From contig NW_003314265.1 of the NCBI RefSeq assembly GCF_000143415.4, positions 262,405 through 326,404 on the forward strand: 64,000 nucleotides of DNA. Reading direction: 5' to 3'. The stretch comes from Selaginella moellendorffii. Taxonomy: Eukaryota; Plantae; Lycopodiophyta. Under the pieces are notes generated by a model. It ran no database searches and had not been told where the DNA came from. It worked only from the letters and a program-made list of their open reading frames with translations. Below, in pieces: positions 8,083 through 50,494 of the stretch (position 1 is its first letter; every line of letters begins with the position of its first letter). The translations under genes were made by a program, and so were the position numbers.

Positions 8083-11000
8083 ATGCGAGGCGCATTGGAT
8101 CGGCGCGTTCTTCTCAAGGTACGCTGCTACTGCACTAGTCCCGGGCGAGGAAGAGGAAGAGCCGCCGCGGCTCCACCGTCCAAGCAATCGCCGCTACCGG
8201 CAGCCCCGGCACCAAAATCCGCGTCGTCGTCTCCCGGTGTAGGTCACGGCAGTGGAATCGCAGCTCCAGCTACAACTCCTGTGTCGAGCTCCGGGCGAGG
8301 CAGGGGTGAATCCCCGATCGCAGCTGCTAGAAATGCCACAGGGCAAGCACTACAAGCAAATGTGGCTACATCCAGTCCAGCTGCGGCGATTCCACAGGCC
8401 AAAGCTACGGCAGTGAAGGCAGCGAAGGCCGCGAAGGCCGCGATTCCAGCACCAGTCAGCAACATCACTGGTGTTGTGACGAGCGGCCAATCTCCACCTT
8501 CGCAGGTAAGAATTCCATTTGTAGTGTAAGAACTACCGTTATAACTTGTTTTCTGTGCGTTTTTCTCTTCTTTTTCTTGAGCAGGCACCTGCGGATCCTT
8601 CTTCGGAGGTATGCCCGTTAGTTTGCACGAGAAACTTGGCTCATTTCTTGTTTTTCAGCAGGAGACGCCCGCGTATCCCCCGTCCAAGGTAATTGCTTTC
8701 ACCTAAGAGCCTGAATTTTGATGTTGATAAGTTTTTTTGCGCAGAAACCTACAAGCCGTCTTGAGGCTTCGGAAGCTTTTGGTGCGTTGATCCAATCCTG
8801 CGTCAGCCGAGGACTCTACTACGAGATCGACTACGTGCATGCAGCAATGCAAGTTGCTCACATTCCTACGACCATGCAGACGTGCCAAACGCTTCTGAAC
8901 GCCTACATCCAGCTGGGAAATTCCCAGAAGATGGATAACATTTACGCGGAGATGCGGGAGATCAGGACGGGCGGGCAGCAGAAACCAGAGCCGAGCGTAC
9001 AGGAGAAAGCTCAGGCTTCAGAAACTCTTGCAGCGTTGATAAGTTCGTGGTACAGCCGGGGATTTTACCAGGAGGTAGGCATGGCTTACAGAGGGATGAA
9101 AGCCGGCCATCTGCCGGTGTCCATGCAGGCTTGTAGAGTTGTGATGGACGCCTACAATCAACTGGGAAACTACTCAGCCATGGATATGGTTTACAGTGAG
9201 ATGCGAGCACTGATGACAGCAGCAACAGAAACACCAATCGCTGCGCAGCAACCAGCAACAACAGTCTCAGCAGTCCCGGCGCAGCCAGTGACAAGACCAC
9301 CCGCAGTACCATCGCATGGTGTTGGTCACGGAACACCTCTTCAGACACCTGGGATGCAGCATCAAATTGGCCAGGCTCCTCAATACCAGCAGTCTCAACA
9401 AGCTCCAGCCACATTAAATCCACAGCAGCCTGCGGCACCGCCAACACAGCAATGGTCTCAAACGTCGGCTTACTATCCACCGAATCCATACGTCAATATG
9501 CAGCCGGTTCCTCAGGCTCCAGTCGGATATCATCCTCAAAGTCAGCCTTCGGTATATCATCCAGGATATCAACAAGCCTATCAGGGGTATCCGGGATACT
9601 ACCAGCAAGCTTATCCGGGATACCAAACGTATCCAGGATATCCACCGGGCTATCCTGGATATCAACCGGCTTATCCTCCGGGCTATCAGTATCCCCCTCC
9701 ACCTTATGCACCAGCAGCAGTCCCACCGCCGCCACCTCCACAAAATGTCGCTATTGCAAGACCACAGCAATATCCTGCTACACAAGTTGCCACTCCAGCG
9801 CCGCAAGTTCCGACATCAACTGGACAAGCTGCGCCACAAGCTGTCGGCCAAGCTCCCCGACCAAAACTCGAGCTTCAGCCAAAGGCGCTTGAGTTGCTGC
9901 AGCAGTCACCAGAGTTACTCAAAGCTGCAGGTGATAGAGCAACTCTTATGGAAGGTAAAGCTGCGGCGAGTGCAGTGCGGCCTCAAACGCAGGTTCAAGC
10001 GCAACCTCCCCAGCAGTTTTCGCAGGTACCGTATCAACAAGTACCAATGAGCGTCCACAGCCCAGCTCAGTTTACAGCAGGTGTTCCTCAAGTTAGACCG
10101 GCTGGACACGCTCAGTTCCAAGCGCCACCGCAACCAGTTCCGATATATCCTTCAGGACTCCCTTTGAGACCAGGAGTGGTGCAAAGGCCAATTGGCCAAC
10201 CACCTTCGACGCATGTTCCAGAAGCGCCATCGGCCGCCAAGAAACTGCCACCTGAAGTTCCAGCCGTGAAAATTGAGGCGTTGAAACCACCGCCACCACC
10301 ACCAAAGCCTGTAGAGACGAAGAAAGCAGCGGTTGTGGACACGGTGTCTCCAAAACCTGCACCAGCAAAGACCGATATCAAATCGCAAGTTGAGGCGAAG
10401 GTTTCAGTGGCGGCTAAGAGTAAAGATGTGGTAGCGTCAGTGCCAAAGCCTGAGAAGACTGAAGTTAAGCCGAAGACACCTGCAGCGGTGGCTGAAGAGT
10501 CTACTCCAAAGCTGAATCTCACGCCAAAGAAACCTTCAACTGTGACGGAGCCTCCTCCAAAGTTGGATCTTCAGCTGAAGAAACCTGCAGAAAAGAAGGA
10601 AGAACCTCCAAAGTTAGACCTGAAGCTGAGGAAACCTCCAACAGTGACGGAAGAGCAGGCTGCGCCTGAAACCAAAGACGAACCTGGACGTGCTAAACTG
10701 GAGCTTAAGTTGAAAAAGCCTTCGGCTGTTCCCGTAAGAATGAAGGAAGAAACCACACCTGGAGCTGTAAAAGTACAAGATGAACCAGCAGAAGCGGAAG
10801 GAAGTAGACCTGGTGTTTCAAAAGCTGCGCCGTTGAAGCTGGAAGTAAAATTGAAGAAAGAAAAAGCTGCAGAAGCTCCGACGCCCGAACCTCCAACCGT
10901 ATTACATGGACTTGGAAGAGGCAAAGTAGTGGAAGAAAAATCTTCGGACCTTCCCAAGCCACCTCCGTTGCGTCTTGATCTGAAGAAGCCGGGCTCACCG

Positions 11001-42431: not shown

Positions 42432-44328
42432 ATGGAAATGGACGACGATAGTCCAGAATTAGGGCTGGGCGACGACGAGGACGAGGACGAGTACGCGGTG
42501 GTCACGAGGATCTTGGATTCCTTCTTGCATCGGCCTGATGATGGCGATTGCGCAGCTGCATTGCAGCGAGAGGAAGATCCAGGCAAGGATTTCTTTTTTT
42601 TCTTGGCTCTTTAGAGTGGATTGAGAATGCGGTCGTGTCTAGTGCCTGGATCAGCTGCTGCTGCCGACGGCGACGCTTCCAATCAGGATGCCTTGGCGAT
42701 TGTTCCAGTCTCTTATCCGGAGGAGCCGATCGTGGAGAATGCCTCATCATCTTTGGCGATCGTTCAAGGTTGCGAGGAAAATGGAAATGCGCGATTTGAT
42801 GGGGGCCCGCGAAGAACGTTTATCATGGAAATGCAAGTTTTCGTCGAGGACATGAAGAAGAAGAGCCGGAGACGGCTCAAGAATCTCGACCAGGTGATCC
42901 GGCAGGGAATTTTTCTTTCTTTCTTTCTTGTCACTAAGCATGACTGTTTTTTCCCTGATTTTTTAGGACAGAAGGACAAGCTAAAACCTGAAGAAGCTGA
43001 CAAGATCAACCGTGGGTAAGACTTGAGTAGATTTACCTATTGTACTTAAATGGTTGGAGCAGTCTAGAGACGATCACTATGCTGGATATGAAGCTTCAAG
43101 AGCTGGAGCGAGGAGCCAGACATCGCCGTCTCGGCGGTAGAGAATATGAGTCCGATGCATCAAGAAAGCTGAGGTAAGAGAGTAACTTGTTCGAAAGCCT
43201 GTTGAGAGCATCTGTTCTTCTTAGGGATGAGAGGAAGAGACGACGAAGATATGCGAAACTTAAGCGATCTCTGGAAAATCTAGACGCCTTGCATCCTGAG
43301 AAACAAGGTCATGTTTTAAGAAATATTCTTCTAGGACCAAGTGCGAGGTACTTCAGGCTCACGGTGAGCGTGTTTTACTCGGTCAGATTGCTTTATAACT
43401 AGCTGTTTTTTTTTTTCCAGCCAGAGGAGGAAGCGATGGTGGAAGAATTGCTTCGCCAGCAAGACATTGTTGACGACGATGGGGATAATAGCAGTGTTAT
43501 CTCGCATGTCTCAACGGTATTTGCTAACACTCGACGCTGGTATGCTCGCACTAAAAGAATTTGGACCAGGCCTTTGATGTGGAGGGCCAAGAGGCCGTTC
43601 GCCTGGCAGAGATAGACTGCAGGCTAGACCCTTACAAAGAGAGCCACAGCTATTATTCCATTTCACCCATGGCGTCGTGTACGTCTTGTTTTTTCTATTT
43701 TGGTTCTTCTATATTGGTGGCTGACGCAGTGTTTGTTTGCAGCTTCTACTCCAAATAGCAAAACTTTGATGCCTGGATGTCCGTCATTGTCTCCCATGGC
43801 TTCAGGTAAACTTTATCCGTGCACAAGGTATTCCAAAAGATTAAATTCTCTCCAGCATTCTATCAAAATATTCACTCACTCACAAACTCGCGTTTTTCTG
43901 TTTCAGTGTCCACGCCCAAGAGCAAGTCGTATTTCGAGAATGGCGAATCTCGGACCAAGTCAGAGGAGTTCTCCGTGCATCATGAAGCTTTGTCAAGAGC
44001 ACTCGAGCCTTTCGCAGGAACTACAGTTGTGGAGGACTACTTAGGGGAGCTGAAGGAGAGGCGAGAGTACGAAGAAAAAATGGAGGTAACATAATTGTCT
44101 CGCCTCGAGTTTTCACTGAACAACCCGTGGCCGCCAGGAAATCGACAAGAAACTCAGACAACTCCACATGACAGAGGCTCCCGCGGGTATAACAGACGAT
44201 CAACTCATGCAACTCGTAAGCTTCCTTTTGTTTTGGTTTGTTGTTTTGCTTGCTGATCGTCTTTCTGGCCTATGCTCCAGCTGAGTGCCTCAAAAAGGGA
44301 ACAAGAGTTATATGCTGCCATCCAGTGA
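42432..44328 (+). CDS. Putative FSIP1 (fibrous sheath-interacting protein 1)-like coiled-coil protein, ~11 exons
   Basis: Consistent spliced frame containing GHVLRNILLG..EEEAMVEELL, RLAEIDCRL and EDYLGELKERREYEEKMEEIDKKLRQL..TDDQLMQLL. These resemble recalled FSIP1 blocks in the same order. Confidence 0.65.
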
Positions 44329-46428
44329 AACACAACAACAACCAAATGTGTACAATCGCATAGCACAGCCTTCACAAGATCAAGAACAAAAAATGTAAGC
44401 CTTTGCTTTTCCTTTTCTCTTTGTCCCTGGGGGACATTGTCTCATGCTCCTAGTGGGATTGGCTAGCTATGGCTTATAACATGAACATCACTGAGATAAG
44501 AGTAGTATTAGAGAGATTGACAAGCAAAGTAATAGCTAGCTAAGCAATTTATACTAGAGAGAGTGTGCGTGTGTGTATCTTTGTCTTTGCAGTGCTGAGA
44601 TCCTGTGAGATCTTCCTTACTGCCTATCTCTCCAATGAGAGAGAGAAACAGAGGGGCTGAGCTGTATGGAGTGTGTCTATAGGGCCAAGGTGGTGGTGGT
44701 ACAGCATGGACTTAATGCATTAGCAATTAGTGGCAACAAGTTGACGGAATTGAAAGGGGGGAATATATAGGTAGGTCGCTGGCTGGCCGGAAACACAATC
44801 GTACCAAAGTTGTTGTTGCTGCTGTGCTGCTGCTGACCGGTGGATATTTTCTTTTTAGTGTGAATTTAGCTACCAAACAAAAGAGGGAACAAACGAGGCT
44901 TGAAGCACCCCCCACCCCCAAATTCAATTCCTTGAGTGCGATGTCGCATGCATGGGCATGCCATCGTGCCCCATGCTCGGCGCTCAGGCAGGAAGGAGGA
45001 GCTGTAAAAATCCTTCCCCGGGTAACAAGTGACAGTGAGGGAAACCAGGAGGGAGCATATGCTCTGCATCTCTGTGTGTATGTGAAACTCTCGCTCGCTG
45101 CCCTGAGAACGCGCAGTGGCAGCAGCAGGCTTTTGGAGATTTTGCCGTGGCCCCAGAATCGGGAGACAGAGGCAGAGATTGGCTGTTTGTTGTTTCTTTT
45201 TTTCTTTTTTTTCTTTTCTTTTCCTTTAGTGCTTTTTTAGCAGTTCATGTTCAGTTAGGAAGGAGTCAACCACCACTGTTCTCACAACACAGCACCACCA
45301 AATCTTTTACCTCCATTGACGCCACAAGACTGAAAGGAGTGAAAGAGGGATGAGGGAGCAGAGAACAGGCCAGCATTGCACATGCAACAAGCTAGCCCAT
45401 GCCAGGCACACCTCACTGTCATATTCCTCACAAGGTGATGGTGATCATGATGGTGGAGGGCCTGAAATTCAAACCAGCACCACCACCAGTCCCTCCCCCA
45501 AATTGTGCATGATTCCAAAGAGATTATGAGGCATAGAATAGAAGCCCATATGACACATAACATACTGTTTTGGCAATTTTTTATTCAGTATCATATAAGC
45601 ATCCATGCCAGGAATTTGACATACCAGGAGTAACAGTGTTAGCATTGTCCCCCAGGAAGGGGTTAGGTAGGTCTACATCCACATCTTCCTCTTCTCCCAC
45701 AAGAGCAATGCAAAAACAAGGAGATAGAATGAGTTTATATTCCCTTCATTGCCCCCCTTCCCTGCCCTGCCCCTCCTGCCTCCCTGCCTGCAGCACTCAC
45801 AAGAAGAATGCAAACAAATTCAAAGCCTGTGTTATTTTTGCTGCTCCAGAGCTGGGCTCAGCCTACCTTCTAGTAAGTACTGTTTCATCATCCCTACTTT
45901 ATTGGGGATGTTGTTAATGCTTATGCATGCATGGCTGCCTGGGTGAATGGCTGCATCCAAAAGAGTTTAACTCTTGTTTGATCCTTCCTGACTTTACCTG
46001 GCTGTTGCTCCAAACATGCACTCACACATTACATATGATGTGGGTACCTTTCTAAATTTTCGCTTGCACTGTTTTGTGTGTGGTGTTGTCATGCATGCGA
46101 ACAAAAGGCAGGTGTAGTAGATCTGCTTACCAACCAGAGATAAAGAGCAAGGAGTTCTTTCCTCTTTTTAACAGTTGACACAAGATACAAGTTGAGCTTG
46201 AGATCAAAAAGGATTTGTGTGTTGTGTGTTGTGTCCATGCTTCTTGCTCCAGCAAACTGGGAAGCAGCAAGACATTCTTGTTTTACAAACCAAGACATCG
46301 ATGATACCCTTTTCTGTTGGATCAGTGGATGATCTTGGCACCAAAAAAGGAGAGCATTATAACTTGGCACTGGTACAAGGAGCTCAGCAGCAGCAGCAAT
46401 GCATCATACAAAAGGACTGATCGTTGCG

Positions 46429-47809
46429 TCATGTTGTCGTTGCCACCACCATTGACAGTGGGAACATGCAAATGCCCTTGTCTTGCAACGCACTTGCAGC
46501 TTGGCAAGTCTGCGAGGTCATTGCGCTATCGCCAGCGGAGGCAGATTGCTCGCTGCTCAATCCATCCTTTGAAGCTCCAAACATCTAAGAAGGCAAAACA
46601 AAGCTTAGAACTTCCGCTAGGATCGCTCGCAGCAGCCAAGAAGCTCTACCTTGATCTCCTCTTCCAGACTTTTCACGTAGTCGATCGCGACTTCTAGCAC
46701 TTGCTCTTCATCCAGCTGCAAATGGTTTACACAAACACGGAATACTTAGCGCGCTTCTCAAGAGCCAAACCAGATCGCCCCGTACCTGTCTACTACTATG
46801 TGGTATCAAGTGCTGCAGCAACTCCAAGCGTGAATCTACAGCTTTCTCGTGTATCTGGTGGAGAAGGAAGACAAGACCGTCAATCCACGAAACAATCAAA
46901 GCCCGGAAGCAGAAGCTCGCTTCTTACATTGACGCTTGGAGGGCTGGAAATCTCGGCTTCGCCAGCCTCAACCTCGACCTCATTCTCATCCGAGTGCTCA
47001 TCTACAACCTGCAAAGAGAAGCATCCATGATAAGTTTCCAGATCAGAAACTCCCATGTTATAATTTACCTGAGGAGGCCGTGACAATGCTGGTTGATGAT
47101 CATCGCCGACTCTACTTCTCTTGCATCGCCGTCTAGCCGGCCTCGGATCGTCCGAGACCGACTCACAGCTGAGATTCGACTGGCAAGTATCATCGAGATC
47201 ATTCTCGCCCTCCCGGACGACGCAACACGGATTGGTTTCCCTCACCGCCGCCGACTTTCTCTTCCCCCGTAGAGCGTTCCTCCTCAACCCCTCCTTTCGG
47301 AGGAGCTCGGGCTGCTCGGGACCAGAGGAAGCGTCCGACTCCATTGACGAATCTTCCCGCCACTCGTCCTCCATCGACCCACCATCGTCGATCGATCCGG
47401 GTCTTATCAGATGTCTCGACAAACTGTTGTAAGCGTTCCAATCCACGGAGATATCCAAGTAGGCCGTCCAGCCCGACTCGGACGTCGCCTCGGGCCTTTG
47501 CCCAAGATCCAATTCATCGATTGGGTCTTGTGGATTCGCGCTGCTGGGGGCTCCATTCCTGGCACAAATCTCGTTCGCTCCATCATCCCTTGTGGCTGGA
47601 GAATTAGCGAGGCGAGCAAGCGTTGGAACCGTGCTGTCTGTGAAGATGGATCTCAGGGGAAGTGGCTGCTGCTGTAACCGCGACGACTGGAATTTCCTGG
47701 CGACGCCAAAGCCGGCTAGAGCCTGCGATTCATTCTTGGCGAAGGAGGCGGCCCAATCGCATGGAGAGGTGAAACCGCGAGCGAGATCGTAAGCGGGATC
47801 TCTTGCCAT
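46429..47809 (-). CDS. SOFL/VUP1-motif protein with a C-terminal atypical (non-basic) HLH domain
   Basis: Exons 47809-47069, 47008-46928, 46854-46786, 46715-46650 and 46584-46429, all GT-AG and phase 0. Motifs ESGWTAYLD, DSSMESDASSGP, LDDT, SRLELLQHLIP|LDEEQVLEVAIDYVKSLEEEIK| and LQDKGICMFPLSMV. Confidence 0.85.
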
Positions 47810-50494
47810 GAGAGGAGCGCTGGAATGTAGAAATCAGCAACGCATCTGCCCCGAGAAACCAGAGAATCGATCGGAAATGGGCGCGGGACGAGCGAGCGAG
47901 CAAAGAACGCGAAGATCCAAGAATCAGGGAAAATGTGGATAGGAGAGATCACACTCCAGACCGTGACGAACGGCCAAACTATCGCGATCGCGATGAGCAA
48001 ACTCTCAAGGGGCAAGGAAAGGAATGCCGCTCAAAAAGCCCTCGCGCAAGCACGCATACCAAGAAACAAAACTAAAATCAACTAAAGGAGAACCTAGTAG
48101 GTTAAAACGCCGCTAAGCTAATAGGAACCGGCCGTACGTACGATGGGTCCAGCTCCCCCGGCATATTCCTCACGGGTGAAAATGTATTTGTGCATGTGAC
48201 GCAGGTTAAAAGCCGACGTGGACAGTGTGGATGGAAGTTAAATTGGATGGCAGGTGGTGGTAATGATAGAGGGCAGATACATACAGATACCCGGGGCACA
48301 TGCGCGCGTGCTAATGACCCACACGTACGGATATTCCCCTTGCTCCAAGTTGTGGCCCACTCCGCACGGAAGAGTACATATAATGTACGCGTTTGGTAGC
48401 GGTTGGATCGGCGGGCGTATGCCCATCCAACGGTGGAAACGGGCAAGGCAACTAACTTACTTTGTATGCATGGAGTGCACGCAAAGGTGGCGTAGGGTTA
48501 ACTACATTGGAAACGAATGAGTAAGTGTGGGAATGGAATGGAATGTGATTGGAGTGGCCCATGATGCACTAACAAAGATTGTGGGGGTACTGTGCGAATA
48601 ATTCCGGCACCTTTCGGGCCAATCACAGGGAATATGCTTGTTCTAGTTTTCTTGGCCATGTTCCATCCCTGACACGGAGGGGAAGATCATGTCATGAATT
48701 TAGACAATGGAGCTGTAGGCAGGGTAAGATTACCAAGGTTTTTACTGAGGTTTATAAAGATTTACCAGCCAGCCAGCCAGCATACATTTGCATTTGCATC
48801 AAGTCAAAGTGAGGACCGGGGATGGTTTTAGAAAAGTGGCGAAGCGCATGTGTTACTTCGCATTGTCTATGGATTGATCTCGCGCCTTGATGTAAATCTA
48901 TGCGACACACGAAGCGAAGGATACCATAGCCCCTCGGATCGAATTACCTCGCATTGTTTTCTCGTTCTTTTCTTTTAAATGCAAGTTTCGCCACCGCTTC
49001 AATCGCATCCATGCACAAGTTTCTAGTGCGTCCATGTGAGATCTAGCGAGGAATTCAACTTGGGTGAGCTGGCCCCTTGTGGATTTCGGATCTTGGGGGA
49101 CGGGGGCGTGGCGAGACATGGGGCGGGAGATCTCTACAGTTCAAAGTGTTGGGTGATTGGGGCTCCCTCGTTTCCCTGGAAATGATTTTCTAGGGCGTGG
49201 CCATGGGTAGCAACTCAAAGTCAGGACATTCACCAGGCTTTGAGATCGGTCAACCAGCCTCGATTCCGCCTTTTCTTATCTCCCGCGTAGATTATTGCCT
49301 TTGATTACACTGCCTAGAACATAGAAAGACATTCTTTGCATCATATAGAAACCTCCCATGTCCCGGAAGTGCCATGCACTCCCCACATGCACGGTTGCAT
49401 CGCTAGCCAGCAGACACTAATAATCCATTCAATCGGAACTTTCTCACAAAGTTTACTCAAATCGAAGTGATCCTTTAAAAACCCTCTACTAGAACGTTAC
49501 ACGTTAAGAGGGATCTCACCGTGTGGACAGACAAGGAGGAACCCTAGAATTGTTTGTGGGCATTACCAAGTCCTGCAAATTGGCCATGTGAAACTATCAC
49601 AACACACTGAAAACACGCGGATTAGGACACGCCATGGCCAGCAGAGCTTGTCATGTGAAAACGATCCAAGTTGGTGGAGTTTAAATGTAAATTTTATCTT
49701 AAAGCAAGATTGGTCAACCACCAAGGACCTAATCCGTACACACGCCCCGCTTACAAAAACAATTCGCCAGTGAACGTGTGCTATGCGCTGTGATTCAAAG
49801 ACAAGCTCCGAGATAGATACATGTGTCGCCCTTCCTGTTAACAAGCGATTGGATGATCCCCGGAATCGTGATTCACCGCGGAGATTAAACAAGTCGAGCG
49901 ACACTGCACGTGCATGTCAATTTGCCCTAACCTTTAAAACCCTAAATTCTTTCAACGGTCACCACAGGAGGGCTGGGATATTTCCCCCGAGGATTTTTAA
50001 AAGGCCGCGTTCCGTACGCATCCTTTTTGGTTGCGTGTCCACATGCACACGAAGATGTGGCCACTGACACCATCCCGTCGCGCTACGCTTTTGGCCCATG
50101 TGCCTGACGGGCATACGGTACCACTCGCCCGCAAATACGTACCCGTACAGCGGAGATACACATTGGCATGTGCGCCGTACTGACATGCCTTGTACTCGTG
50201 ATGTGCTGCTGCTGCCGTGGAAGTCGACGCTGCTGGCCAATGGCAGACGGCCACGCGGCAGGTGCCGAAAGGCATGTGGCCATGTGGTGTTGCGCAGGGG
50301 TTGAATTTGGGCTTTGCAACAGCCAGCCAGTCAGCCAGCTAGCTAAAGAGACCTACTTAAATGGCGCGCTTTCTCAAAATTTCGAAAGCTCCAAGCGCGC
50401 AAACTGCCGCGGGATATACCCCAGATGTCGGCTAAGCCCTAATCCAAGAGCCCTAAAATTGGGCCGGCAGAAATGTAGCTCAAGAGTCGCCGCC

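What the first reader, a model, noticed from the sequence alone, without database searches (positions are those of the whole stretch)
46429..47809. SOFL/VUP1-motif protein carrying a hidden basic-less HLH domain: possible link between bHLH factors and the SOFL/VUP family
Seen: the ORF track shows only a 309-aa ORF, but four canonical phase-0 introns extend it. The spliced protein has ESGWTAYLD (47479-47453), DSSMESDASSGP (47354-47319) and LDDT. It then has a 69-nt exon IHEKAVDSRLELLQHLIPHSSRQ, a 66-nt exon LDEEQVLEVAIDYVKSLEEEIK and a last exon with LQDKGICMFPLSMV. Known: SGWTxY and SMxSDASS define SOB5/SOFL and VUP1 proteins, which are described as small proteins without a recognised domain. 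The helix1-loop and helix2 exons reproduce the conserved bHLH intron pattern (...LVPxxxK|xDKASxLDExIxYVKxLQxQVK|). The LxxKGLCLxPxS tail occurs both in VUP1 and in bHLH subfamilies X/XI (LRL). Here the basic region is replaced by an acidic stretch. Inference: this is a non-DNA-binding HLH inhibitor, and either SOFL/VUP proteins descend from such bHLHs by HLH loss or this is a lineage-specific fusion. Either would give SOFL/VUP a mechanism: sequestering bHLH partners.
Basis: partly seen in the sequence, partly recalled or inferred. Interest (0 to 1): 0.9.

Follow-up and report, generated by a model that had tools for sequence, protein, structure and literature searches.

The report
SOFL-motif protein with basic-less HLH
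This expressed Selaginella gene encodes a helix-loop-helix protein with no DNA-binding basic region that also carries the two signature motifs of the SOFL proteins, and its relatives show that flowering-plant SOFLs are shortened descendants of this older protein type.

Summary
The five-exon, 370-aa minus-strand gene (47809-46429) is real: spliced contigs from four runs of four studies remove exactly the four predicted introns. It is Selaginella moellendorffii. RefSeq already models it as "transcription factor BHLH089", so the HLH is not hidden from databases.

It carries SOFL-A (ESGWTAYLD), SOFL-B (DSSMESDASSGP), a KR-rich block, an HLH with no basic region, and an LRL-like tail (LQDKGICMFPLS). 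The same architecture occurs in Diphasiastrum, Cryptomeria (named "SOB FIVE-LIKE 6"), Ginkgo and Taxus. Ferns keep only HLH plus tail.

Three introns around the HLH sit at the same positions and phase as in an LRL-type bHLH gene. Amborella and Magnolia SOFL5-like genes keep this exon layout, with a vestigial helix-1 exon and a helix-2 exon stopped after about ten codons. Angiosperm SOFLs therefore arose by HLH truncation, not by a lycophyte fusion. This contradicts the 2018 SOFL survey, which found SOFLs only in angiosperms.

The proposed mechanism, sequestering bHLH partners, is inference with only weak predicted-complex support. The VUP link was not testable. The "LDDT" match is not homologous. 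Two unchecked scan notes raise the same idea elsewhere in this genome.

The parts
46235..48070 (-). Transcribed region: 5' UTR, five exons and 3' UTR
   Evidence: Spliced contigs in runs X1, X2, X8 and X10 cover 46235-48054/48070. One X2 contig holds the whole mRNA.
47069..47809 (-). Exon 1 (247 codons): N-terminal region with SOFL-A, SOFL-B, the lycophyte SCESVSD motif and the KR-rich block
   Evidence: It matches RefSeq protein P0001 (370 aa), which differs from the window protein at 5 residues.
47453..47479 (-). SOFL-A motif ESGWTAYLD (residues 111-119)
   Evidence: SESGWTxYL is invariant in alignment A2. It matches the SGWTxY definition in PMC5873917.
47318..47353 (-). SOFL-B motif DSSMESDASSGP (residues 153-164)
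   Evidence: D.S..SDASSGP is invariant in A2. It matches the SxxSDA / SMxSDASSxP definition.
47111..47134 (-). KR-rich block RRRCKRSR (residues 226-233), probably a nuclear localisation signal (inferred)
   Evidence: A conserved K/R cluster in A2. The NLS role is inferred from composition only.
46928..47008 (-). Exon 2 (27 codons): acidic stretch in the place where an LRL-type bHLH gene encodes the N-terminal half of its basic region
46786..46854 (-). Exon 3 (23 codons) IHEKAVDSRLELLQHLIPHSSRQ: degenerate basic-region remnant, helix 1 and loop start
   Evidence: AF2 predicts a helix at residues 275-290. The exon boundaries match the LRL exon LRRERIAERMKALQELVPNANK. E9, R12 and R13 are replaced by V, H and E.
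46650..46715 (-). Exon 4 (22 codons, 66 nt) LDEEQVLEVAIDYVKSLEEEIK: helix 2
   Evidence: AF2 predicts a helix at residues 300-328 with pLDDT above 90. Cryptomeria, Adiantum and an LRL gene have the same 66-nt phase-0 exon.
46429..46584 (-). Exon 5: linker plus the C-terminal tail and the stop codon
46447..46488 (-). C-terminal tail LQDKGICMFPLSMV (residues 352-365), shared with LRL-type bHLHs
   Evidence: L..[KR]GLC..P.S is nearly invariant in A3. LRL-type proteins P0034, P0056 and P0070 carry MQYLQGKGLCLMPIS.

Best explanation
The locus is an expressed Selaginella moellendorffii gene for a 370-aa atypical helix-loop-helix protein.

Shown: it joins the SOFL-A and SOFL-B motifs and a KR-rich block to an HLH domain that has no basic region, followed by the C-terminal L..KGLC..P.S tail that LRL-type (class XI-like) bHLH factors also carry. 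The HLH and tail derive from a bona fide bHLH gene, because three introns sit at identical positions and phase. The composite protein dates at least to the common ancestor of vascular plants, since it is found in lycophytes and gymnosperms. Ferns kept only HLH plus tail. Angiosperm SOFL5/6-like proteins are truncated derivatives that stop about ten codons into the helix-2 exon.

Inferred: having no DNA-contacting residues, the protein cannot bind E-boxes itself. It most likely acts through HLH-mediated dimerisation with basic bHLH partners, with LRL-type kin as the leading candidates. That would form non-DNA-binding heterodimers, as Id, PRE, IBH1 and SACL-type HLH proteins do. The SOFL-A/B module would supply a second, still unknown, interaction or regulatory surface.
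For: - Gene model and splicing.
- Species and existing annotation.
- Same architecture in Diphasiastrum (P0003, P0004, P0005, P0097), a Selaginella paralogue (P0046), Cryptomeria (P0006, 'SOB FIVE-LIKE 6'), Ginkgo (P0007, P0010) and Taxus (P0091).
- Local HMM classification of the 193 proteins held: 13 have SOFL + HLH + tail, 115 have SOFL only (including all the named angiosperm SOFLs), and 14 have HLH + tail only (11 fern or unplaced basic-less proteins plus the three LRL-type bHLHs).
- HLH identity: the family profile against PDB gives MYC2 at 3.6e-7, then MITF, Max, TAL1 and ID-1. Psilotum member P0008 passes the Pfam HLH cut-off at 22.4 bits. AF2 predicts helix-loop-helix.
- No basic region: 0-2 K/R in the 13 basic-region positions in 26 of 26 members, against 4-5 in canonical bHLHs.
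- Intron positions are identical to LRL gene L004 and conserved in Cryptomeria and Adiantum.
- Angiosperm truncation: the Amborella and Magnolia exon layouts and hhalign of angiosperm C-termini against the gymnosperm HLH, E 1.9e-4.
- Dimerisation: predicted complex with the bHLH+tail region of an LRL-type protein scored 0.47, best of 3 controls 0.01, verdict 'weak support'. The mark was reached by 51 of 78 solved complexes and 2 of 108 mismatched pairs, but scores of 0.60 or under came from only 5 of those 78 and from all 4 passing mismatches. The runs agree in at least 68% of contacts and partner pLDDT is at least 57.
Against: - Pfam HLH on this protein alone is below the gathering score (16.0 against 20.7).
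- The partner used in the complex test is from another, unidentified plant, and any HLH pair may score from memory of solved bHLH dimers. The verdict was only weak.
- No experimental data exist for any SOFL-HLH protein.
- Arabidopsis SOFLs work without an HLH (overexpression phenotypes depend on SOFL-A/B, PMC5873917). The SOFL module therefore has an HLH-independent activity, and the HLH may not be the core of the function.
- No bryophyte or algal member was identified, so the fusion's age beyond tracheophytes is open.
Confidence: 0.6

Rival explanations
1. The HLH serves only to homodimerise, or to dimerise with SOFL-HLH paralogues. This would bring two SOFL modules together, and the protein would not titrate DNA-binding bHLH factors.
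For: The family has several paralogues per species: two in Selaginella and at least four in Diphasiastrum. The SOFL motifs are functional on their own in Arabidopsis. Support for a heterodimer with an LRL-type bHLH was only weak.
Against: Known basic-less HLH proteins of plants and animals generally act by heterodimerising with basic partners (established knowledge, not tested here). The shared tail and intron pattern show close kinship with LRL-type bHLHs, which usually favours cross-dimerisation. Homodimerisation was not tested.
Confidence: 0.2
2. The protein is a non-inhibitory cofactor. It docks on a bHLH or another partner through the HLH and/or the conserved tail, and delivers the SOFL module (for example a hormone-related activity) to chromatin or to another complex.
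For: The tail L..KGLC..P.S is as conserved as the HLH itself across lycophytes, ferns, gymnosperms and LRL proteins, which suggests a separate binding function. A KR-rich, NLS-like block is conserved. SOFLs are reported in both nucleus and cytosol.
Against: There is no evidence for any activity of the SOFL motifs or the tail. A heterodimer with only one basic region is not expected to bind an E-box stably (established knowledge).
Confidence: 0.12
3. The architecture is a lycophyte-specific fusion or an annotation artefact joining two genes, and the SOFL-like motifs are chance matches.
For: Before the tests: the 2018 SOFL survey found no SOFL in Selaginella. Pfam finds nothing in exon 1.
Against: Single spliced contigs join all exons. 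The same architecture occurs in Diphasiastrum, Cryptomeria, Ginkgo and Taxus. An angiosperm-only SOFL profile hits the protein at E 8.6e-4 with Z = 5.8e9. Angiosperm SOFL genes keep the vestigial HLH exons.
Confidence: 0.02

Closest known systems
SOFL (SOB FIVE-LIKE) family: SOB5 and AtSOFL1-6 (Zhang 2006/2009; Tayengwa 2018, PMC5873917)
   Same: SOFL-A (SGWTxY) and SOFL-B (SxxSDA / SMxSDASSxP) are present in the same order and with similar spacing, followed by a basic cluster. Profile-level homology is shown. The gymnosperm orthologue is named SOB FIVE-LIKE 6 by RefSeq. Amborella and Magnolia SOFL5-like genes share the exon layout.
   Different: SOFLs are described as small, angiosperm-only proteins with no conserved C-terminal region. 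This protein is from a lycophyte and is 370 aa. It carries a complete HLH and a conserved tail, and lacks a positionally homologous L[DE]DTASSP motif.
LRL-type (class XI-like) plant bHLH transcription factors, represented here by P0034, P0056 and P0070
   Same: The HLH is similar. The three introns (in the basic region, in the loop and after helix 2) have identical positions and phase, and the helix-2 exon is 66 nt in both. Both carry the C-terminal motif ..L(Q)xKGLCLxPxS.
   Different: The basic region is absent here: E9, R12 and R13 are replaced and there are 0-2 basic residues against 4. The N-terminus carries SOFL motifs. The linker between helix 2 and the tail is much shorter. The protein is therefore not an LRL member.
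Atypical non-DNA-binding HLH proteins: animal Id; plant PRE/PAR1/KDR/IBH1/AIF and SAC51-like
   Same: An HLH without a functional basic region. The family profile also matches the ID-1 HLH in PDB. The expected mode of action is titration of bHLH partners.
   Different: No sequence kinship beyond the HLH fold was shown. Those proteins have neither SOFL motifs nor the KGLCLxP tail. Inhibitory activity has not been tested here.
VUP1 / VUP family (Grienenberger & Douglas 2014; InterPro IPR039280; Pfam PF27761 'VUP_C')
   Same: Precomputed Pfam VUP_C hits fall on the gymnosperm orthologues P0006, P0007 and P0092. The same Pfam family occurs in clusters of small bHLH or bHLH112-like proteins. This is consistent with the tail being the shared element.
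   Different: No VUP sequence or Pfam model could be examined. The Selaginella protein itself has no precomputed VUP_C hit.

Membership tests
SOFL family | SOFL-A domain with SGWTxY | tested here: met
   ESGWTAYLD at residues 111-119. Invariant across A2. Definition taken from PMC5873917.
SOFL family | SOFL-B domain with SxxSDA (SMxSDASSxP in Arabidopsis) | tested here: met
   DSSMESDASSGP at residues 153-164. An angiosperm-only SOFL HMM covers both motifs at 36.9 bits.
SOFL family | Small protein with no other conserved domain; reported only in angiosperms | tested here: not met
   The protein is 370 aa with an HLH and a tail, and comes from a lycophyte. The literature description itself appears too narrow.
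SOFL family | Overexpression dwarfism or a cytokinin phenotype that depends on SOFL-A/B | not testable with these tools
   Needs plant transformation.
bHLH superfamily (Pfam PF00010) | HLH profile match | tested here: inconclusive
   This protein alone scores 16.0 bits against a cut-off of 20.7. At family level the match is clear: PDB MYC2 at E 3.6e-7, P0008 at 22.4 bits, and AF2 predicts helix-loop-helix.
bHLH superfamily (Pfam PF00010) | Basic region with DNA-contacting residues (H5/E9/R12/R13 pattern) | tested here: not met
   V, H and E occupy the E9, R12 and R13 positions. There is 1 K/R among 13 positions, against 4-5 in canonical bHLHs. The same holds for 26 of 26 family members.
bHLH superfamily (Pfam PF00010) | Conserved plant bHLH intron positions (basic region, loop, after helix 2) | tested here: met
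   Window exons IHEKAVDSRLELLQHLIPHSSRQ | LDEEQVLEVAIDYVKSLEEEIK | align with LRL exons LRRERIAERMKALQELVPNANK | [22 protein letters not shown] |, all phase 0.
LRL / class XI bHLH | Conserved C-terminal ..KGLCLxPxS motif | tested here: met
   LQDKGICMFPLS compared with LQGKGLCLMPIS.
LRL / class XI bHLH | Functional basic region (a DNA-binding transcription factor) | tested here: not met
Atypical inhibitory HLH (Id/PRE/IBH1-like, functional class) | Heterodimerises with bHLH partners and blocks their DNA binding | tested here: inconclusive
   Predicted complex with an LRL-type bHLH scored 0.47, best control 0.01, verdict 'weak support'. The blocking of DNA binding cannot be tested here.
VUP family (Pfam VUP_C / IPR039280) | VUP_C profile match and similarity to VUP1-4 | tested here: inconclusive
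   Precomputed VUP_C hits exist on gymnosperm orthologues, marked 'faint' for P0006, and none for P0001. The model is absent from the local Pfam copy. The VUP1 paper is not held.

The most novel reading that the evidence does not exclude
The whole SOFL family of flowering plants (and possibly VUP) is the remnant of an ancient tracheophyte family of basic-less HLH proteins derived from an LRL-like bHLH gene. In the ancestral protein the SOFL-A/B module and the HLH/tail worked together to modulate LRL-type or related bHLH growth regulators. Angiosperm SOFLs would then still act on the same pathway through the SOFL module alone. This would give these 'domain-less' hormone and growth regulators a concrete molecular context and a set of candidate partners.
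Probability: 0.35. Interest if true: 0.75.

Novelty: new variant of a known kind. Interest (0 to 1): 0.62.

Why it matters
SOFL proteins affect cytokinin levels and organ growth when overexpressed. VUP1 overexpression reduces organ size and down-regulates brassinosteroid-responsive genes, and a VUP1-family gene (TSS1) is a candidate style-length gene of the Linum distyly supergene. Neither family has a recognised domain or mechanism.

The published SOFL survey dates the family to the angiosperms. The evidence here moves the origin back at least to the ancestor of vascular plants. It shows that the ancestral form was an atypical HLH protein related to LRL-type bHLHs. It also explains a conserved angiosperm SOFL5/6 C-terminal motif (..FGFLQSSLPGKP..VCREE..) as a vestigial helix 1.

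This turns an open question, what SOFLs do biochemically, into testable hypotheses. One can ask whether they interact with LRL-type or related bHLHs, what the SOFL module contributes with and without the HLH, and what the shared tail does. The finding is evolutionary and annotational rather than a new kind of mechanism, and databases already label the individual pieces.

Tried and rejected
- Pfam on the single exons gave nothing useful. PF27761 'VUP_C' is not in the local Pfam copy, so its extent could not be checked.
- The VUP1 paper (PMC3982757) is not held.
- Literature searches for a described SOFL/VUP-bHLH link found none. Searches for the gene identifiers and for run SRR6920682 also found nothing.
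- The Selaginella paralogue P0046 is not in this window.
- No SOFL exon lies within 6 kb upstream of the Adiantum HLH+tail gene. No helix-2 or tail remnant lies within 3 kb downstream of the Amborella SOFL gene.
- The look-up of encoding contigs had no record for P0046, P0005 or P0004, so Diphasiastrum exon structure was not checked.
- An HLH-only tree (54 columns) separates gymnosperm, fern and an unplaced clade. It leaves the lycophytes unresolved, and the split from canonical bHLHs has only 73/86 support. It was not used for any claim about order of events.
- The lineage-specific-fusion and chance-motif readings were rejected (see rival explanations).

Full report
**1. Observation**

Reading the minus strand and assembling the five proposed exons gives an uninterrupted 370-codon frame. 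Exons are 47809-47069, 47008-46928, 46854-46786, 46715-46650 and 46584-46429. The four introns are 60, 73, 70 and 65 nt, GT..AG and all phase 0.

Contigs from four public runs of four different studies skip exactly these four intervals. One 1552-nt contig runs from 46235 to 48054 with all four removed. The downstream HLH exons therefore belong to the same mRNA as the 309-aa ORF.

The motifs sit where stated, except that SOFL-B is at 47353-47318, one base off.

**2. Identity and existing annotation**

Exon 1 finds a 370-aa RefSeq protein of Selaginella moellendorffii named 'transcription factor BHLH089' (P0001). It is the same model and differs at 5 residues, probably the other haplotype.

It also finds an older, wrongly spliced 422-aa model, SELMODRAFT_408928, labelled 'BHLH domain-containing' by UniProt, and a Diphasiastrum orthologue. 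The HLH is thus already labelled in databases.

Pfam HLH on the protein itself is sub-threshold: 16.0 bits against 20.7, covering only profile positions 17-53, that is without the basic region.

**3. The family**

A profile search of 1.84 billion representatives and two word-indexed searches recover the full architecture. It comprises SESGWTxYL, EDSSMASDASSGP, a KRRR block, the HLH and L..KGLCLxPxS. It is found in:
- Selaginella, including a 181-aa paralogue, SELMODRAFT_408741, on the same scaffold but not in this window;
- Diphasiastrum, with four genes;
- Cryptomeria, where RefSeq names it 'SOB FIVE-LIKE 6';
- Ginkgo, with two genes;
- Taxus, and several unnamed conifer-like transcripts.

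Fern proteins (Psilotum, Adiantum, Ceratopteris) have only the HLH and tail. Every named angiosperm hit is SOFL-only.

The local HMM classification of the 193 proteins held gives these counts:

| Class | Sequences |
|---|---|
| SOFL + HLH + tail | 13 |
| SOFL only | 115 |
| HLH + tail only (11 fern or unplaced basic-less proteins plus 3 LRL-type bHLHs) | 14 |

**4. Is it an HLH, and is it basic-less?**

The HLH+tail alignment of 22 members (A3) hits only (b)HLH domains among solved structures: MYC2 at 3.6e-7, then MITF, Max, TAL1 and ID-1. One Psilotum member passes the Pfam gathering score.

AlphaFold2 on A3 predicts helix 275-290, a loop, and helix 300-328. Mean pLDDT is 71 and helix 2 is above 90.

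In the 13 positions that form the basic region, canonical bHLHs from the same search have 4-5 K/R and an R-R pair at positions 12/13. All 26 family members have 0-2 K/R and never the E9/R12/R13 pattern. The window protein has V, H and E there.

**5. Descent from a bHLH gene**

An LRL-type bHLH gene (P0070, locus L004) is split as ...SIAER | LRRERIAERMKALQELVPNANK | [22 protein letters not shown] | VLS... The window gene is split as ...PPSVN | IHEKAVDSRLELLQHLIPHSSRQ | LDEEQVLEVAIDYVKSLEEEIK | MFG....

All three introns are phase 0 and at the same alignment positions, and the helix-2 exon is 66 nt in both. Cryptomeria and Adiantum have the same layout. The LRL-type proteins also carry the tail MQYLQGKGLCLMPIS.

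**6. Relation to angiosperm SOFLs**

The angiosperm genes compare with Cryptomeria as follows:

| Gene | End of exon 1 / start of exon 2 | Exon 3 | Exon 4 |
|---|---|---|---|
| Amborella SOFL5-like (P0155, L002) | ..LEDTASSPVSSLPK / SGLT.. | ERAQLQSSFGLFSTKP | ICREESRRQR-stop |
| Cryptomeria (P0006, L001) | ..LEDTASSPLHSFK / SGLT.. | ADAVNKRLDFLQSILPEAP | MCREETVGVAIKYISALEQRIK |
| Magnolia SOFL5-like (P0129, L005) | ..LDDTASSHVFSFSN / NCFN.. | GKTALQKHCGFLETSLPLKPTSKAQP | VFREESKNKIW-stop |

Amborella and Magnolia each have four phase-0 exons. Many angiosperm SOFL5/6-like proteins share the C-terminal pattern ..SALQKHFGFLQSSLPGKP..VCREE... A profile-profile comparison aligns it to gymnosperm helix 1, the loop and the start of helix 2 at E 1.9e-4.

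Conversely, an HMM built only from angiosperm SOFLs scores Cryptomeria at 104 bits and the window protein at 36.9 bits.

Together with the lycophyte plus gymnosperm distribution, this shows that the composite protein is ancestral in vascular plants. Angiosperm SOFL5/6-like proteins arose by truncation within the helix-2 exon. SOFL-only genes also exist in conifers, for example a Cryptomeria tandem trio, so truncation may have happened more than once.

This contradicts the published survey. That survey found no SOFL in Selaginella or Physcomitrella, concluded that the family emerged in angiosperms, and saw no conserved C-terminal region (PMC5873917). No paper in the searchable library links SOFL or VUP to HLH proteins.

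**7. Mechanism**

Shown: an HLH fold, no basic region, a conserved tail, a conserved KR-rich block and transcription.

Inferred: the protein cannot contact E-box DNA and acts by HLH dimerisation. The most economical model is titration of basic bHLH partners, with LRL-type kin as prime candidates.

A predicted complex of residues 266-370 with the bHLH+tail region of an LRL-type protein scored 0.47, against a best control of 0.01. The verdict was 'weak support'. The mark was reached by 51 of 78 solved complexes and 2 of 108 mismatched pairs. Scores of 0.60 or under, however, came from only 5 of those 78 and from all 4 passing mismatches. The runs agree in at least 68% of contacts and partner pLDDT is at least 57. 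Because solved bHLH dimers exist, such a pass may reflect likeness only.

The roles of the SOFL-A/B motifs and of the tail remain unknown. Arabidopsis SOFLs need SOFL-A/B for their overexpression phenotypes, so that module has an HLH-independent activity.

**8. VUP**

The only evidence is indirect. The Pfam family PF27761 is named 'VUP_C' and has precomputed hits on the gymnosperm orthologues, faint for P0006. It also occurs in clusters of small bHLH or bHLH112-like proteins.

**9. Corrections**

'LDDT' (residues 205-208) lies before the KR block and is not conserved in Diphasiastrum. The SOFL L[DE]DTASSP motif lies after the KR block in gymnosperms and angiosperms and has no counterpart in the lycophyte proteins. 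Lycophytes instead share C.SN.SCES[VI]SD.

**10. Earlier scan notes**

Two unchecked first-reader notes on other pieces of this genome (s1-337485 and s1-351405) propose the same idea. They probably concern the other haplotype and the paralogue. I did not examine those pieces.

**Verdict**

The mechanistic half is plausible but unproven. This is a new variant of a known kind (atypical HLH proteins) and it revises the origin of the SOFL family.

Noticed in passing
window 46429-46715 (3' exons): The older public model SELMODRAFT_408928 (P0002, 422 aa) leaves the correct frame after ..AIDYVK and runs on into unrelated sequence. None of the spliced contigs supports it, while the 370-aa RefSeq model matches them.
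   Followed up: partly
window 47702-47825 and SNP table across 46483-47970: Runs carry two allelic versions of the transcript; run X8 has two contigs of similar depth that differ at several sites. The window protein differs from RefSeq P0001 at 5 residues (A10S, E99G, D142G, E202D, T345S). This is consistent with the two haplotypes of the S. moellendorffii assembly.
   Followed up: partly
window 45900-46117: A separate low-depth contig (run X8, depth 3.3, with small insertions and substitutions) lies just beyond the 3' end of the gene. It may be a neighbouring transcript or a divergent allele.
   Followed up: no
P0046 (SELMODRAFT_408741), same scaffold, not in the window: A compact 181-aa Selaginella paralogue has SOFL-A, a degenerate SOFL-B (LSVLSDASSGP), an HLH and the tail. 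It sits on a very long branch in the HLH tree.
   Followed up: partly
L003 (Adiantum), P0008/P0009 (Psilotum), P0022 (Ceratopteris): Fern members are 127-206 aa proteins with only the HLH and tail. The Adiantum gene (L003), the only fern locus mapped, has the same exon layout. Exon 1 keeps only a KKLKL..PPSSSP remnant, and no SOFL exon lies within 6 kb upstream in Adiantum.
   Followed up: partly
L006 and L007 (both from run SRR6920682, organism unknown): Two divergent SOFL-HLH transcripts come from one unidentified plant. One has an unusually long loop (..LIPCLKEVAGRASEEEML..). They form a well-supported separate clade in the HLH tree.
   Followed up: partly
Cryptomeria proteins P0109, P0124, P0126 (LOC131073269-71): Three consecutively numbered SOFL-only genes on one Cryptomeria contig lack the HLH. 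This suggests HLH loss also occurred within gymnosperms.
   Followed up: no
window 42432-44328 and 8770-9212: Other first-reader notes on this window (an FSIP1-like protein and a PPR-like module) were listed by the scan index. I did not examine them.
   Followed up: no
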